From Chlorokybus atmophyticus (lineage: Eukaryota > Plantae > Mesostigma and Chlorokybus algae), in assembly GCA_009103225.1 (NCBI GenBank), contig RHPI01001292.1, forward strand, positions 352,430 through 416,429: 64,000 bases of DNA. The letters are read 5' to 3'. The translations under genes and the position numbers were made by a program. Shown piece after piece: positions 36,160 to 42,429 of the stretch; position 1 is the first letter of the stretch, and each line of letters opens with the position of its first letter. The notes under the pieces are model-generated. The model saw only the letters and a list, made by a program, of their open reading frames with translations, was not told where the DNA came from and searched no databases.

Positions 36160-38182
36160 TCACAAGCGCTCGTACGCCGCAGCAAGCTCCCGCAGTGCTT
36201 TGGCTATCCTCATCCCCCTCTCCCCGGTAAAGAGGTCCTCCCCTTCAACCCGCCACGCCCAGTTCCCCTCCGCGACCCCCGGGACATTCATCCTTGTCGA
36301 GGAGTCGAGAGCGAGGACGTCCTGCATGCTGACTATGGCTGTGCGGCCCACTGAGGAGAGGGCGCAACGGATGAAGTCCCAGGAGATGGAGGAACCGTCG
36401 GTGCCGAGGTAGGATCTGCGGATGTGTGTGTGCGGGACAGTGTTGGTGGGGATGAGGTATGGGGTGATGGGAAGCAGCACAAGAGTTGAGTCGGGGTGTA
36501 CCTGATGCGGTGCTTGGTCAGCTCGTCGGCCTGCCATCAAACGGAATGTCAATGAGTGCTGTTTTTGGATTTGTGTACAGTAATGTGTCTCGATGTTTGC
36601 ATTCGCGTGTACGTGTGCACGTGCACGTGGGTGCGCGCACGCCTGCAAGGGCAAGCGTGCGGACATGTACGTACATCTGCGTGCACGCGCGCATGCAACT
36701 TGTGTAGGTCAGTATGCATGTGTCTGCATGTCTGTCATTATGACTGTTTGTGTGCCAATGTGGGTGTGCGTGCTTGAGTGTGTGATGGTGTGCGCACGGA
36801 CTCATGCGTGTGTGTGCGCGCACTTGCACATCGCACACCTTCTGGTAGTATCCCAGAACGGTGTCATTGTCATGTGTGCCCGGGTATACAACACTGTTCT
36901 CTCGGTGGTTATGTGGCAGATGCACGTTGCGCGGCTTGCCGTCTTCAAACGCGAAGAGCAGCACGCTCATGCCAGGCGCGCCCACACTCTCCCGCAGGGC
37001 CACCACGTCAGGCGTGATCACGCCGAGGTCCTCCGCCACGATCGCAGCACGCGCGTTGCCACCCAACCGCCGTGCAATGGCGTCGAAGAAACTTTGCCCT
37101 GGACCCACCCGCCATTCACCTGACACACACACACACACACACCAAATCAACCCAACACGGCTCCCATATACACAACCTCTCGTGATGTGTCTGTGAAGTG
37201 GTAATCTTACCTTCCATTGCTGTTGCTGACTTTGCGTTAATAGCCCAATACCCCGCAAGCCCCCTAACACAGACAAGTCAATCGTGTTTGTAACACACTT
37301 TGAGGAGGTGACGCAATGTAACACAACTCGCGCATGGAGTGCACAACCCACCTGAAGTGGTCTATTCTCAACTCATCATACAACTCCAAGCTGCGCCGCA
37401 ACCTCCCAGTCCACCACGCATAGTCCTACACACATCACACACATCACACACACATTCCCACATAAGCCACCCACCCGACCCCCCACCCCCCACCCACCCA
37501 CCACAACAACAACACCTCCTCACACCTCTTGTTGGTGCGCTGTCCAGTTGTACAGCGGCGACCCCCACCTCTGTCCCGTCGCAGAAAAGGCATCCGGCGG
37601 CACTCCCGAAACCTGGTGGTGGTGGTCGAAAGTCTCGAGGTAGTAGTAGTCTCTTGTTGTCTCATTCATAGCACGTGTGTCAAGAGATGGACTGAGTAAG
37701 TGATTCACTGACCTCTGCGGGGGCGCCCGTGACGGGGTCGAGGCAGAAGAGCGTGCGGTGGCACCACACGTCCGCGGAGTGGCCGCCGACGTAGATGGGG
37801 GCGTCGCCGAAGAGGGAGACGCCCTTGCTGTTGGCGTAAGACTTCAGTTCCTGCAGGCAATGTGAAGTGTTGGATTGGGGGTGCGTGGGTGGGTGCGGGT
37901 GCGGGTGCGGGTGCGGGTGCTTGCACGTGCTCGTGTGCGTGTGTGCGTGTGTGCGTGTGTCCTTGTACACGGCAGCTGTGCTACAAGTCGTACACAATGT
38001 GACCACATCAAAGAGAAATACTATGACACAGTGCAGTATCAGATAGTGCTGTCCACACCTGCCATTGCCGGTTGAAGAGGAACTGCTCAGCGACATAGAC
38101 ATCGACCTCATGACCCTTTTCTGCCCACACTCTGGCCAGTGCATCCCTGGTGCACGCAAGCATCAGACTTCAAGCCCACACC

Positions 38183-38214
<32 letters not shown>

Positions 38215-40996
38215 CAACACTCGCTCACTTGTCCCTGTCCCTCAGCTCCGGCGGCCACTCCCAGAAGTTCTTCCCTCCCAACATGCGATCGATCGCCGTG
38301 AAGAGCCCCGCGTCCCAGGCCCACGCGTTGGCGGGGTCGGACTTCCACGCGTCGAAGTGGACGCGGAGGGCGGGGGGACCGGCGGGGGAGAGGAGACGGG
38401 AGGCGGCTTTGTGGAGCAAGGGGTCTGTGGGGGCATGTGGGTGGGTGCGCGTGTGCTTGTATATGTATATGCATGCGTGTGCGTGTATGCGTGCGTGCGT
38501 GCGTGCACGCGCTTGTGCTTTATTGCATGTAAGCGCGCGCGTGTGAGTGCGCCTGCGATTGTATGCATTGTGCACGTGCGCGTGCGCGTGTATGCATGTG
38601 CGCAAGTGCATGGGTGTGCACCCGCGCACATATGCGTATATGTGCGCGTGCAGGCGCGCATGGCTTGCTGGCACCTGAGACACACCCACGCACAGTTGCG
38701 CGTTCATGTGCGTGTTGAAGTACCTAGCACACACACCTTTTATGGCTGCGACAGCTGGGAAGTCAGCTCGGCCGGCGGGTAGCGGGTGTGGGCGGTCCGA
38801 CTCGTCGAGGAGGCCGTCACCGATGAGGGCGTCTATCGCCACAAGCAGCGTGTTCCCTGCGCAATTCGCCCTGCGTGTATTGTAGTAAACACATACACAC
38901 TCAACAATGGCAAGCCAGTCTCATGGTGCATGACTGCTAAGATGCACACTGTGTTGGTGCATCCGTGGCCTTGACGATGACGGAGACCGTGCGTGCGGGT
39001 TGTTGTTCTGTGTGAGTTGGTACACATAACAACGTGTCAAAGGCCCACAGTACCAGCGCTGGAATCAGAGCCGGAGTATGGTGACCAGTAGTCTGGACGG
39101 CTTGGTGTGGGTCTACCAGGCGGCACCAAGGGCAACACCTGCCAGCACGCACACCCGCATACGACCTTCATCACCTCAAGCATGTGCATCATGTCAAACC
39201 CCCAAACATTCTCTCAGCCTCACCTGCCATATGGTCATCCCCGCTTCCGCCATCCAGTCCACGAACCGGTACGCGTGGTACCCCATGTCCCCGCAGCCGG
39301 CGGGTCCCGGGAGGGACGTCGGGTGGAGCAGCACGCCCGCGCGACGCCTCCTCGCGGGTGAGGAGGAAGCCTCTGCATACGGCTGAGGCATGGCGTGACC
39401 GACGTGGGGATCGGAGGCCCAGACGGACTCGGGGGCAGTGATGAGTTGGTCCTCTGTTGCAAAGAGGAGGAGACGTAGTCACAACCCAACATTAACTTCA
39501 TACAACTCGCGCATCCACGCACCTGTCAGCGACAAGCGAGTGCGCACGCGCACACATGCACGCACATGCAGGTGCGTATGCATACGCACACGCATGTGCA
39601 CACATGTATGCACGCACACAGTCACAGGCACACGCGCGCACGCGCACGTGTGCACGCGTATGCGCACGGGCACATGCAAGCACAACCTACCTGTGATGGA
39701 GAGTGCCATGAGCGCTTTGAGGTCCGCTCTCACGCGCTCGAACTCGGCCGCCGCCTCCTGCTGGCTGCGAGGGGGCCTGCCCGCGGCCTCCCAGCGCTGG
39801 TAAGCCCACTTCTCGCACAGACGCAGCGACGGCTCCACTGATGATGAGGGTGATGATAAACTCTGCTGGCCGTCTCGCTTGGCACACCCTGCGCGCATGC
39901 GCACTGAGAGAGTGTGTGTGCACGCGTGACTGTGCATGTGTGCACGCGTGCGCGCACATGTGCACACGCACACACATGCGCACGCGTGTATGTGTGTGCT
40001 TGTGTGAGAGTGAGCAAGTGTTGTATTGCTTCATCATGAGGCAGTGGGACTCACCAATGCCAGCTGGCAGCGGTGGAGGCTGTGGTGGTGGTGGTGGCGT
40101 TGGTGCCGGCTCTGTTACGTAAAGAGGGATGGAAAAGGGCGTGCCGGGTATGCCGTCGCGGTTGTGCCACACGCCCGAGTCGCCCTCGCGCACGGCGAAC
40201 TGAAGCTGCGTCCTGGGCGCCACACGACCGAGAGGCAAGACAGTCTGCTGCACGCCATCATCCCCCTGTGTGGTGCAAGGTCAACGTAGCACACATTCAG
40301 ACGCCCAGGCTCGCATACGCATGTGCACGCACAAACACATAGGTACATTTGCACCTATGCATGTGCGTGTGCACTCGTATATACATACACGCACACGCAC
40401 ACGCGCACGCGCACGAATTTCCATTTCCACCCCACCCTGAGTAGTGTTTCGACGGCCTGCCCCGCGACATCCACCGACCCCGCGGGCCAGCAGTTGTTGG
40501 GCGGCTGCTCCCATCTGCTCCCATTTGCAAGCGCATTCACCAGTCCCCAGTGCAGCGCCAGTCGACCGCGGGCACCCTCAGAACACACGTGAACGTGGAC
40601 GCTACCGTCCGAAGACTCAAAGACAGAAACCTGGGTGAGATTGTTGTAGTTGTTGTTGTTGTTGACGTTGTTGTTGATGCTGATGAAGCGGCACTGACTC
40701 GATCTTACCTTGATGAGGCCTGAATTGTTTGGGAGGTTGAAGGTGTGGTTGGCTTTGGTTAGGGCAGAGAGGGTTGTAAGCGTGCGCTGCGTCCTCCTTC
40801 TCCTTCTTGAGGATGTGATGCTATGGCGTTTATATCGTAGTGGGTGGTTGTTGTGAAGTGGTTGCGATGCGGTGTTGTGAAACGCTTTGTTGCTGGGCCT
40901 CCGCCAGCTTGCTGCTGATGAAGCAGCCTGCTGTCGCTGATGAGGCAGCTGCCATGAGGGTGATGGTGGCAACCACCTCGCAGCCAGCGACCACAT
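36160..40996 (-). CDS. DPE1: Plastid 4-alpha-glucanotransferase (disproportionating enzyme DPE1, GH77) with N-terminal CBM45 and a GWD-like segment
   Basis: GH77 motifs RRAGVLLHPTSLPG, WQVLPLVPP, WSPYSG, GDAPIYVGGHSADVW, GVPPDAFSATGQRWGSPLY, catalytic RIDHFRG / AEDLG / YPGTHDNDT, RMNVPG..GNWAWR. Upstream exons splice in phase (0,1,1) and contain LHWG...WEQPP...WPAGS...AVET. Start ATG 40996 or slightly upstream. Confidence 0.93.
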
Positions 40997-42429
40997 GCGC
41001 TTGCTTGTGTTGAGAATGCAAATGTCTTGGAAAGCTTCAGTCTCAGGCTTTGTTGCAGCTTCTGTCTGCATGCAAAGGAGAAAGTCACGCCTGCCAGCTG
41101 GCACACAGTACACGCGTTGCACACGCAAATCTACCCAATGCAGCAGGGTTCGGATGAGTGTGTGCTACTGAGGCAGGGCATGCCCATGTCCTTGTCAATG
41201 TAGCAATGAACGACATGTCATTGCTAGCACGGTCACTTCGCACGAGGCAGGCAAGCCTGGCCTCTCTTTCCTCTTGCCGCCGCCGCCGCCGCCGCCGCCG
41301 TCGCCGTGTGCGTGTCACTGTCCAGCTTCCGCTCTAGGTCTGATAAGTTATGCATCAATGAAGTGACATTATTGGACGAATCTCGTATGATTGGCAATGG
41401 TGTAAGTAAGGGAGTTTTACCAAGCCAAGTTGGCTTTTTACTAACCCACTTCAAGCTGCAAAAGTCCCCAAGTGTTCATTTCGCATCAGCAATTTCAAGC
41501 ATGTTCAAGATGAAGTGTGGCTGTATAGATGCTTGGAAGTAGCTACATACATTGCAGCATCATATTCTTGTTAAGCAACAGATAATAAAAAAGATGCATT
41601 GCAATAAAATGAATACGCAACTGTACCTACATATCTGTGGCACTCAATTATCCAGCATGCGTCTGTCCCAACTTAGCCATATGCGTAAATTGCTTGCAAA
41701 GCCAAACGTTATGAATAAGTGGCAGCGTTGCGCGCGTGCATACATTCATGTGCGGCTGCGCTTAGCGATTTATCAATGATGTTCATCCAAGGAGGAACGC
41801 TTCTTCTTGATGTGACCGACGTGCAACACAATACTATTGTGTTGCATAATGTTCACTGTCACATTTATCGCAGCTGGTGTGATGCCTTGATTATTGCCAT
41901 CACCTATATTAGCTAAGTTTACTTTTGCAAGAAGCTGCCCGCAAAAGATGCATGTTATTACCCGTTGCAGTTGTCTGTTCAACATATGGTGTTTGTACAC
42001 AATCATGAGCACTCATGCTGCTTCAAACATCATGAATGCATCGTGCGACACGTTCATTCACGTGAACTTTGTAGCCAATATAGAAGGCCCCTGTTAAAGT
42101 ATATCTCCTCCCACTTATTTGTTCCTGTTATTAATGTAAAAAAGTAGTTTTGACATTGATAGTATTACAATAAATGCAAAGTCAGCAGTGTATGTACAAT
42201 GGATCGAATGGTTGTTTGATGACATAATGCTATTGAAAATCATGTAATTTGTTTGTTTTTATGTGACATAGATGCGTTTAACAACCAGCCACTAACAAGT
42301 GCATTAATAGCTTAAAAGCGGTTACAAGGAATTATTTACGTATATTATACCAGTACGCAATCAATACGTGTGACAGACAACTAAGATACTTACATGTAAT
42401 ATACCTCAAAACATACCACCTTAATATAG

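What the first reader, a model, noticed from the sequence alone, without database searches (positions are those of the whole stretch)
39221..40996. DPE1 carries an N-terminal CBM45 starch-binding module
Seen: exon 40996-40436 (transit peptide plus LALHWGLV...WEQPPNNCWPAGSVDVAGQAVETLL) joins 40265-40055 (LQFAVRE...WHN...FSIPL plus a Pro linker), 39837-39691 and the first GH77 exon at 39453 with matching phases 0, 1, 1 and no stop. Established: CBM45 (LHWG..W..P..P.G signature) is known from glucan water dikinase GWD and plastid alpha-amylase AMY3; canonical DPE1 has no CBM, and DPE2 has CBM20s. Inference: a granule-targeted disproportionating enzyme and a new domain combination in starch metabolism.
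Basis: partly seen in the sequence, partly recalled or inferred. Interest (0 to 1): 0.8.

Follow-up and report, generated by a model that had tools for sequence, protein, structure and literature searches.

The report
Starch-gripping module fused to algal DPE1
The early-branching green alga Chlorokybus has a second copy of the starch enzyme DPE1 whose gene also encodes, at the front, the starch-binding module and helical hairpin normally found on glucan water dikinase. I found this domain combination in no other organism or paper, but could not confirm it with RNA reads.

Summary
On the minus strand, 41071-36160, there is one 16-exon reading frame. The public Chlorokybus atmophyticus gene model (JGI Chlat1 1258, 828 aa) threads onto it exactly.

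- **Domains (Pfam):** a GWD-type Ig-like/CBM45 module (PF23166, E 6e-11), the GWD hairpin DUF7067 (PF23229, E 1.5e-6) and GH77 (E 5e-138). All three score above their curated cut-offs.
- **Fold:** an AlphaFold model of the front part is a confident beta-sandwich. Its best ESM Atlas matches are the CBM45 regions of plastid alpha-amylase AMY3 and of GWD.
- **Catalytic part:** an intact plastid-type DPE1, closest to solved plant DPE1 structures. It is a weakly supported sister of a second, canonical 570-aa Chlorokybus DPE1.
- **Rarity:** an exhaustive search of 1.84 billion proteins and a word search of 5.8 billion found no other CBM45-GH77 protein. No paper mentioned one.
- **One gene or two:** evidence for a single gene is indirect but consistent. 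The splice phases match. The 237-base gap looks like an intron. The first GH77 exon carries the conserved DPE1 N-terminal motif with no usable start codon.
- **Corrections:** The public model also mis-splices twice inside GH77.

Verdict: a new variant of a known kind, of moderate interest.

The parts
36160..41071 (-). Whole coding region of the CBM45-hairpin-DPE1 gene: 16 exons, 828 aa in the public model and about 850 aa after homology-based correction.
   Evidence: P0001 (EukProt EP00898 Chlorokybus atmophyticus P000286 = jgi/Chlat1/1258) threads exactly onto the window.
40709..41071 (-). Exon 1: start codon (41071 in the public model, alternative ATG at 40996), a transit-peptide-like presequence and the first beta-strand of the CBM.
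   Evidence: Residues 26-104 have 0 Asp/Glu, 14 Arg/Lys and 18 Ser/Thr.
40631..40708 (-).
   Evidence: It has a gtaaga donor and a cag acceptor, GC 0.45, and is removed in P0001. The CBM45 alignment fits the spliced form.
40436..40630 (-). Exon 2: core of the CBM45-type module (LALHWGL, WEQPP, CWPAGS, AVETLL).
   Evidence: Pfam PF23166. Invariant W149, G150 and W161 in alignment A1.
40055..40265 (-). Exon 3: C-terminal strands of the CBM45 module (LQFAVRE, VWHNRDG, FSIPL) plus the proline-rich linker.
   Evidence: The AF2 model has strands up to residue 134 of the piece, followed by the linker.
39691..39837 (-). Exon 4: alpha-alpha hairpin matching the GWD1 DUF7067 (CEKWAYQRWEAAGRPP...EFERVRADL).
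   Evidence: Pfam PF23229 at 28.4-31.6 bits against a cut-off of 27. AF2 gives helices 160-176 and 183-202 at pLDDT about 78-86.
39454..39690 (-). The decisive 237-base intron between the GWD-like front part and the DPE1 part.
   Evidence: It has a gtaggt donor and a caacag acceptor. Purine-pyrimidine alternation is 0.78, like the gene's other long introns (0.72-0.82) and unlike the flanking intergenic DNA (0.55-0.60). There is an in-frame stop 9 codons before exon 5.
39224..39453 (-). Exon 5: the conserved mature N-terminal DPE1 motif (APESVW...VGHAMPQPY) and the start of GH77 (RRRRAGVLLHPTSLPGP).
   Evidence: Alignment A2 with seven DPE1 proteins. tblastn of the homologues starts at 39445-39406.
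36160..39138 (-). Exons 6-16: the rest of the GH77 catalytic domain, with the RIDHFRG, AEDLG and THDND motifs and the stop codon at 36162-36160.
   Evidence: Pfam PF02446 E 5e-138. Solved plant DPE1 structures 9lpw, 5cpq and 1x1n match at E 1e-149 to 1e-153.
38229..38424 (-). Homology-supported longer form of exon 8. The public model starts it at 38341, and exon 7 would then end at 38737 instead of 38735. This adds 27 residues (DPLLHKAASRLL...HFDAWK).
   Evidence: P0077, P0029 and P0061 align to 38434-38231. The score against a DPE1 HMM rises by 50 bits and the match becomes one unbroken domain. The gap in the PDB alignment lies at the same place.
36824..36838 (-). Fifteen bases (VCDVQ) that the public model keeps in exon 14. 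An alternative GT donor after 36839 removes them.
   Evidence: The score rises by 9 bits against the DPE1 HMM. The alignment to 9lpw has a 5-residue gap exactly here.
39949..40012 (.). They are not part of any coding feature.
   Evidence: After that call these letters were sent to no search tool. Only local scripts that read the window file touched them, for exon threading and composition.

Best explanation
This is one nuclear gene of Chlorokybus for a plastid-targeted, catalytically intact DPE1-type 4-alpha-glucanotransferase (GH77). Its transit peptide is followed by the N-terminal unit of glucan water dikinase 1: a single CBM45-type beta-sandwich, a proline-rich linker and the DUF7067 alpha-alpha hairpin. 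The alga also keeps a canonical 570-aa DPE1, so this gene is a paralogue that gained the GWD-like front by exon capture.

Proposed mechanism (inferred): the low-affinity CBM45 tethers the transferase reversibly to the starch granule surface or to long glucan chains. This raises its local concentration where GWD and amylases loosen chains. The enzyme could then disproportionate malto-oligosaccharides at, or onto, the outer chains of amylopectin, while the canonical paralogue handles soluble oligosaccharides. If the enzyme is a dimer, as I recall for plant DPE1 (from memory, not checked here), two CBM45 modules would act together, mimicking the tandem arrangement in GWD and AMY3. The hairpin may dock a partner protein, as the AMY3 hairpin is predicted to do with BAM9.

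Shown: the reading frame, the domains, the fold, the intact catalytic motifs and the rarity. Inferred: that all exons lie on one mRNA, plastid targeting, starch binding, and the biological role.
For: - **Reading frame:** the public model P0001 maps exactly in 16 GT-AG exons.
- **Domains:** PF23166 scores 43 bits and PF23229 28.4 bits, each against a cut-off of 27. PF02446 scores 461 bits.
- **CBM45 hallmarks:** the family-invariant residues are kept in a 45-row alignment.
- **Fold:** the AF2 model has mean pLDDT 86, about 95 in the sandwich. Its top three ESM Atlas fold hits are the AMY3 cluster, a stand-alone PF23166 cluster and a PF23166+DUF7067 cluster (TM 0.54-0.55, rmsd about 3 A).
- **Catalytic part:** GH77 aligns to solved plant DPE1 structures at E 1e-150 with RIDHFRG, AEDLG and THDND intact. 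It sits inside the algal DPE1 clade next to the paralogue P0077.
- **One gene:** the phases match and the 237-base gap has intron composition. Exon 5 carries the conserved DPE1 N-terminal motif. An in-frame stop lies 9 codons upstream, and the only ATG sits inside that motif. GC3 of the front exons (0.72) is close to that of GH77 (0.77). The only presequence lies upstream of the CBM. Run X1 holds 0.45 of the stretch's sampled words, close to the CDS share of the bases (0.50), which is weak support.
- **Annotation:** the genome paper reports transcript support for 9,066 of 9,300 models in general (PMC7027972).
Against: No transcript-derived protein fragment was found either. The public model has two probable mis-splices inside GH77, so it is not fully backed by RNA. 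The fusion was found in one species only, so conservation cannot vouch for it. The DUF7067 score is only just above its cut-off. Sisterhood with P0077 is weak (UFboot 83, SH-aLRT 78). Starch binding and localisation are untested.
Confidence: 0.8

Rival explanations
1. This is an annotation chimera. A small gene for a plastid CBM45-hairpin protein lies directly upstream of a separate DPE1 paralogue, and the in-frame join is a coincidence of gene prediction.
For: There is no RNA evidence here. The same public model is wrong at two splice sites. Other odd GH77 fusions exist in public models, such as P0104 and P0084. Stand-alone PF23166 proteins exist as an Atlas cluster. The fusion is seen in a single species.
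Against: Only 237 bases, of typical intron composition, separate the two parts. Exon 5 encodes the conserved DPE1 N-terminal motif but has no start codon upstream of it, and an in-frame stop lies 9 codons upstream. A separate DPE1 would therefore lack both that motif and a transit peptide. Phase compatibility holds at all joins.
Confidence: 0.1
2. The gene is real and fused, but the front module is a decaying relic of a partial GWD1 duplication and no longer binds glucan. It would serve only as a long spacer or presequence.
For: Identity to other CBM45 modules is only 17-32%. There is a single copy, whereas GWD and AMY3 carry two. The Pfam scores are modest: 43 bits against 120-160 for GWD and AMY3 proteins with two copies.
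Against: All family-invariant residues (LHWG, W161, PP, WP.G, the late W) are retained. The fold is predicted with pLDDT about 95. GC3 is as high as in the catalytic part and the frame is open across four exons. No close GWD source copy was found: the best outside CBM45 hit is 47% identical or less over short stretches. The module is therefore old yet intact, which suggests selection.
Confidence: 0.07
3. Alternative splicing yields both forms. Skipping exon 4 (147 bases, in frame), or use of other first exons, would give DPE1 isoforms with and without parts of the module.
For: Exon 4 is a multiple of three, and exon 3 ends in the same phase as exon 4. Two alternative in-frame splice choices exist in the GH77 part.
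Against: No data either way. Joining exon 1 or exon 2 directly to exon 5 would break the frame.
Confidence: 0.03

Closest known systems
Plastidial disproportionating enzyme DPE1 / D-enzyme (GH77; Arabidopsis 5cpq, potato 1x1n, 9lpw)
   Same: The catalytic domain aligns over its full length at E 1e-149 to 1e-153. The RIDHFRG, AEDLG and THDND motifs and the conserved mature N-terminal motif are present. It falls in the eukaryotic DPE1 clade.
   Different: About 210 extra residues (CBM45, Pro linker, hairpin) lie between the presequence and the DPE1 N-terminus. The listed homologues are 470-662 aa with PF02446 only.
[quoted passage not shown]
   Same: The order of elements is the same: presequence, PF23166/CBM45, then the DUF7067 hairpin. 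Both Pfam families are defined on GWD1.
   Different: There is one CBM45 instead of two, and no phosphohistidine or PPDK nucleotide-binding domains. The catalytic partner is a transferase, not a dikinase.
Plastidial alpha-amylase AMY3 (duplex CBM45 + alpha-alpha hairpin + GH13)
   Same: It is a glucan-active catalytic domain preceded by CBM45 and a helical hairpin. The AMY3 cluster is the best fold match of the module (PMC12458248).
   Different: AMY3 has a rigid duplex of two CBM45 modules that dimerises. The stretch after the CBM45 modules in the AMY3-like P0021, where such a hairpin would lie, does not match DUF7067. The catalytic family is GH13.
DPE2 and bacterial GH77 enzymes with CBM20
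   Same: These are GH77 transferases with N-terminal starch-binding modules. They are the nearest clusters by language-model features.
   Different: They carry a different CBM family (CBM20, PF00686) and belong to different GH77 subgroups. DPE2 is cytosolic and acts on maltose and heteroglycan (established knowledge).

Membership tests
GH77 / DPE1-type 4-alpha-glucanotransferase | Full-length match to the GH77 family model | tested here: met
   PF02446 E 5.2e-138, 461 bits. After exon correction there is one unbroken match of 775-783 bits to a DPE1 HMM.
GH77 / DPE1-type 4-alpha-glucanotransferase | Catalytic Asp / Glu / Asp motifs (RIDHFRG, AEDLG, THDND) | tested here: met
   The motifs sit at residues 640, 691 and 744 of the corrected model and align with solved DPE1 9lpw. 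The assignment of catalytic roles is from established knowledge.
GH77 / DPE1-type 4-alpha-glucanotransferase | Placement among plastid-type eukaryotic DPE1 rather than DPE2 or bacterial MalQ | tested here: met
   The eukaryotic clade has support 100/99 and the algal subclade 95/87. The best PDB hits are plant DPE1.
GH77 / DPE1-type 4-alpha-glucanotransferase | Disproportionating activity on malto-oligosaccharides | not testable with these tools
   This needs an enzyme assay.
CBM45 (as Pfam PF23166 Ig_N_CWD1) | Family HMM above the curated threshold | tested here: met
   43 bits against a cut-off of 27, E 6e-11, profile positions 4-114 of 121. Exon 1 alone gives 37.2 bits.
CBM45 (as Pfam PF23166 Ig_N_CWD1) | Conserved LHWG, W..PP, WP.G(S/T), AV.T and late Trp positions | tested here: met
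   W149, G150 and W161 are invariant, and L, H, P and P are at least 90% conserved, in 45 CBM45 rows.
CBM45 (as Pfam PF23166 Ig_N_CWD1) | Beta-sandwich fold like the AMY3 and GWD modules | tested here: met
   AF2 pLDDT is about 95. Atlas TM is 0.54-0.55 to PF23166 clusters. No solved CBM45 exists for comparison (PMC12458248).
CBM45 (as Pfam PF23166 Ig_N_CWD1) | Formal CAZy/dbCAN CBM45 assignment | not testable with these tools
   dbCAN HMMs were not available. The equivalence PF23166 = CBM45 is inferred from its two hits per GWD and AMY3-like protein.
CBM45 (as Pfam PF23166 Ig_N_CWD1) | Occurrence as a tandem or duplex pair, as in GWD1 and AMY3 | tested here: not met
   There is only one PF23166 stretch in P0001, so the architecture departs from the known members.
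CBM45 (as Pfam PF23166 Ig_N_CWD1) | Starch or cyclodextrin binding | not testable with these tools
   This needs a pull-down, SPR or ITC.
GWD1 DUF7067 hairpin (PF23229) | Family HMM above threshold and a helical hairpin | tested here: met
   28.4 bits on the whole protein and 31.6 bits on the piece, against a cut-off of 27. There are two helices in the AF2 model. The margin is small.

The most novel reading that the evidence does not exclude
Chlorokybus built a granule-surface D-enzyme by capturing the complete N-terminal docking unit of GWD1 (presequence, CBM45 and DUF7067 hairpin). That would show this unit is a portable address tag for the granule surface, and perhaps for a shared partner protein. 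It would also provide a natural test of the old proposal that D-enzyme can act directly on amylopectin outer chains.
Probability: 0.45. Interest if true: 0.6.

Novelty: new variant of a known kind. Interest (0 to 1): 0.45.

Why it matters
DPE1 is usually treated as a soluble stromal enzyme that recycles malto-oligosaccharides. Whether it also works on the granule, as was argued from Chlamydomonas sta11 mutants, has stayed open. A natural DPE1 carrying the docking unit of GWD1, next to a canonical paralogue in the same cell, offers a clean comparison: with and without the module, binding, localisation and activity on granules. It also widens the known partners of CBM45 beyond GWD and AMY3, and gives a first functional handle on the uncharacterised DUF7067 hairpin. 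The limits are that it is so far a single-lineage feature and its transcript structure is unconfirmed.

Tried and rejected
- **RNA evidence.** The look-up of sequencing runs gave four coded runs. No search tool received those letters afterwards.
- **Transcript-derived proteins.** The look-up of encoding contigs for P0001 found nothing. Its 90% cluster has one member. A 186-aa junction piece found only unrelated GH77 fragments.
- **Other CBM45-GH77 proteins.** The exhaustive phmmer search with the 72-aa CBM core gave 28 hits. Local phmmer found GH77 only in P0001. Pfam, run on 16 of them, showed GWD-like, AMY3-like, bacterial GH13 or CBM45-only proteins, and three others read as repeat artefacts. 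A word search over residues 100-420 found only plain DPE1. A search over 105-312 found only the protein itself, so it says little about distant relatives.
- **Chlorokybus GWD1.** I could not fetch it to date the capture.
- **PDB.** There is no sequence match for the module. Foldseek gave only generic starch-enzyme and CBM sandwiches (ISA2 N-domain, CBM56), because no CBM45 structure is solved.
- **AMY3-type hairpin rejected.** The stretch after the CBM45 modules of the AMY3-like P0021 gives no DUF7067 match.
- **Extension typical of algal DPE1 rejected.**
- **Papers.** Seven searches found no description of CBM45 with DPE1/GH77 in one protein.
- **Full-length AF2 model not run.** The tool returns no inter-domain confidence, and only one fused sequence exists.
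Full report
**What is in the sequence.** All donors are GT and all acceptors AG, and the incoming phases are 0, 1 and 1.

An exhaustive phmmer search with the 72-residue CBM core returned an 828-aa protein, P0001. This is EukProt EP00898 Chlorokybus atmophyticus P000286 = jgi/Chlat1/1258. A threading script placed P0001 exactly on the window as 16 GT-AG exons, 41071-36160. The window is therefore this published genome, and the fusion is already a public, unremarked gene model.

- The segment 40996-40436 contains an in-frame 78-base intron (40708-40631).
- The first GH77 exon ends at 39224, not 39221.

**What the parts are.** Pfam on P0001 gives three families, all above their curated cut-offs:

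| Pfam family | Description | Residues | E-value | Bits (cut-off) |
|---|---|---|---|---|
| PF23166 | GWD1 Ig-like N-terminal domain | 110-224 | 6e-11 | 43 (27) |
| PF23229 | DUF7067 of GWD | 263-300 | 1.5e-6 | 28.4 (27) |
| PF02446 | GH77 | (best stretch 456-802) | 5e-138 | 461 (25) |

PF23166 hits twice in each GWD-like and AMY3-like protein recovered, as CBM45 does in the literature (PMC6243121, PMC12458248). I therefore treat it as the Pfam equivalent of CBM45. dbCAN was not available.

In a 45-row alignment of such modules, the window protein keeps every family-invariant position: LHW149G150, W161, PP, WP.G and the late Trp. Overall identity is 17-32%.

An AlphaFold2 model of residues 100-320 has mean pLDDT 86. 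It shows a beta-sandwich at about 95, a proline linker and a two-helix hairpin. Its three best ESM Atlas fold matches are the streptophyte AMY3 cluster, a stand-alone PF23166 cluster and a PF23166+DUF7067 cluster (TM 0.54-0.55, rmsd about 3 A). The PDB holds no CBM45.

The hairpin matches DUF7067. The stretch after the CBM45 modules of the AMY3-like protein, where such a hairpin would lie, does not. The front part therefore resembles the N-terminal unit of GWD1 rather than that of AMY3.

**The catalytic part.** It aligns with solved plant DPE1 structures (9lpw, 5cpq, 1x1n) at E 1e-149 to 1e-153, and carries RIDHFRG, AEDLG and THDND.

The public model is probably mis-spliced twice:
- Homologues align to 38434-38231. 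A model with exon 7 ending at 38737 and exon 8 starting at 38424 gains 27 residues and 50 bits, and the match becomes a single domain.
- A donor at 36839 removes five residues that are a gap against 9lpw, and gains 9 bits.

The best model has 850 aa.

Trees place the domain inside the eukaryotic DPE1 clade (100/99) and an algal subclade (95/87). It is a weak sister (83/78) of a second Chlorokybus protein, P0077, which is a canonical 570-aa DPE1 with PF02446 only.

**One gene or two?** I obtained no RNA evidence. After that I sent those letters to no search tool. Only local scripts that read the window file touched them.

The indirect evidence is consistent with one gene:
- All phases match.
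- The 237-base gap 39690-39454 has the purine-pyrimidine alternation of this gene's long introns (0.78, against 0.72-0.82). Neighbouring intergenic DNA is at 0.55-0.60 and exons at about 0.5.
- Exon 5 begins with the motif conserved at the mature N-terminus of DPE1 proteins (APESVW...VGHAMPQPY aligned with TP..VW...IG.DLP.GY). In the unspliced frame a stop lies nine codons upstream, and the first ATG sits inside that motif. The exon therefore needs an upstream coding exon.
- The only presequence, 79 residues without any acidic residue, lies before the CBM.
- GC3 of the front exons is 0.72, against 0.77 for GH77.
- Run X1 holds 0.45 of the sampled words, and the coding sequence makes up 0.50 of the stretch's bases. 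This is weak, because X1's nature is only guessed.
- The genome paper reports transcript support for most models, but gives nothing for this gene specifically (PMC7027972).

I put the single-gene reading at about 0.8-0.85.

**How rare it is.** Local phmmer found GH77 in only P0001 among the 28 hits of the exhaustive search. Pfam, run on 16 of them, shows GWD-like, AMY3-like or CBM45-only proteins and a bacterial secreted GH13. Three others read as repeat artefacts from their sequences.

The 120 best relatives of residues 100-420 are plain DPE1 proteins of 470-662 aa, apart from two unrelated odd fusions. Language-model neighbours are GH77 enzymes with CBM20, that is, DPE2 and Bacteroidota enzymes. 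Seven literature searches found no paper that describes CBM45 and DPE1/GH77 in one protein.

**How it probably works.** CBM45 modules of GWD1 bind starch and cyclodextrin weakly (Kd in the 0.4-0.7 mM range). This is thought to allow dynamic, reversible contact with the granule (PMC6243121).

By inference, a single CBM45 on a flexible proline linker would hold the transferase near the granule surface or on long chains. If the enzyme is a dimer, as I recall for plant DPE1 (from memory, not checked here), there would be two such modules. The enzyme could then disproportionate oligosaccharides at, or onto, amylopectin outer chains, while the canonical paralogue serves the soluble pool.

The hairpin may bind a partner, by analogy with the AMY3 hairpin and BAM9 (PMC12458248). 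None of this was tested.

**Verdict.** It is a new variant of known kinds (DPE1, CBM45/GWD1 N-terminus). It is apparently specific to the Chlorokybus lineage and of moderate interest.

Noticed in passing
window 40266-40435, 39838-40054, 39454-39690, 38425-38736, 36531-36823: The long introns of this gene are made almost wholly of alternating purine-pyrimidine GTGCGC/ACACGC-type low-complexity sequence (alternation 0.72-0.82). The short introns (78-100 bases) are not. This may be a genome-wide intron filler with Z-DNA potential.
   Followed up: partly
P0077 (jgi/Chlat1/6436, not in this window): Chlorokybus has a second, canonical 570-aa DPE1 with PF02446 only. It is the weak sister of the window gene in GH77 trees.
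   Followed up: partly
window 38229-38424 and 36824-36838: The public gene model of this locus appears mis-spliced at two places inside GH77. It lacks 27 conserved residues and carries 5 extra ones.
   Followed up: yes
P0027 (1415 aa, database protein): This is a bacterial alpha-amylase (GH13) with a type IX secretion tail. It carries two PF23166 (CBM45-like) modules and a CBM48-like module, so CBM45-type modules are not restricted to plant GWD and AMY3.
   Followed up: no
P0104 (Tetrabaena, 1110 aa) and P0084 (743 aa): These are other public DPE1 models with extra domains (PF25752+PF02446 and PF02446+PF03134). They may be real fusions or annotation chimeras.
   Followed up: no
window about 41270-41300: There is a (GGC)n trinucleotide run about 200 bases upstream of the annotated start codon.
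   Followed up: no
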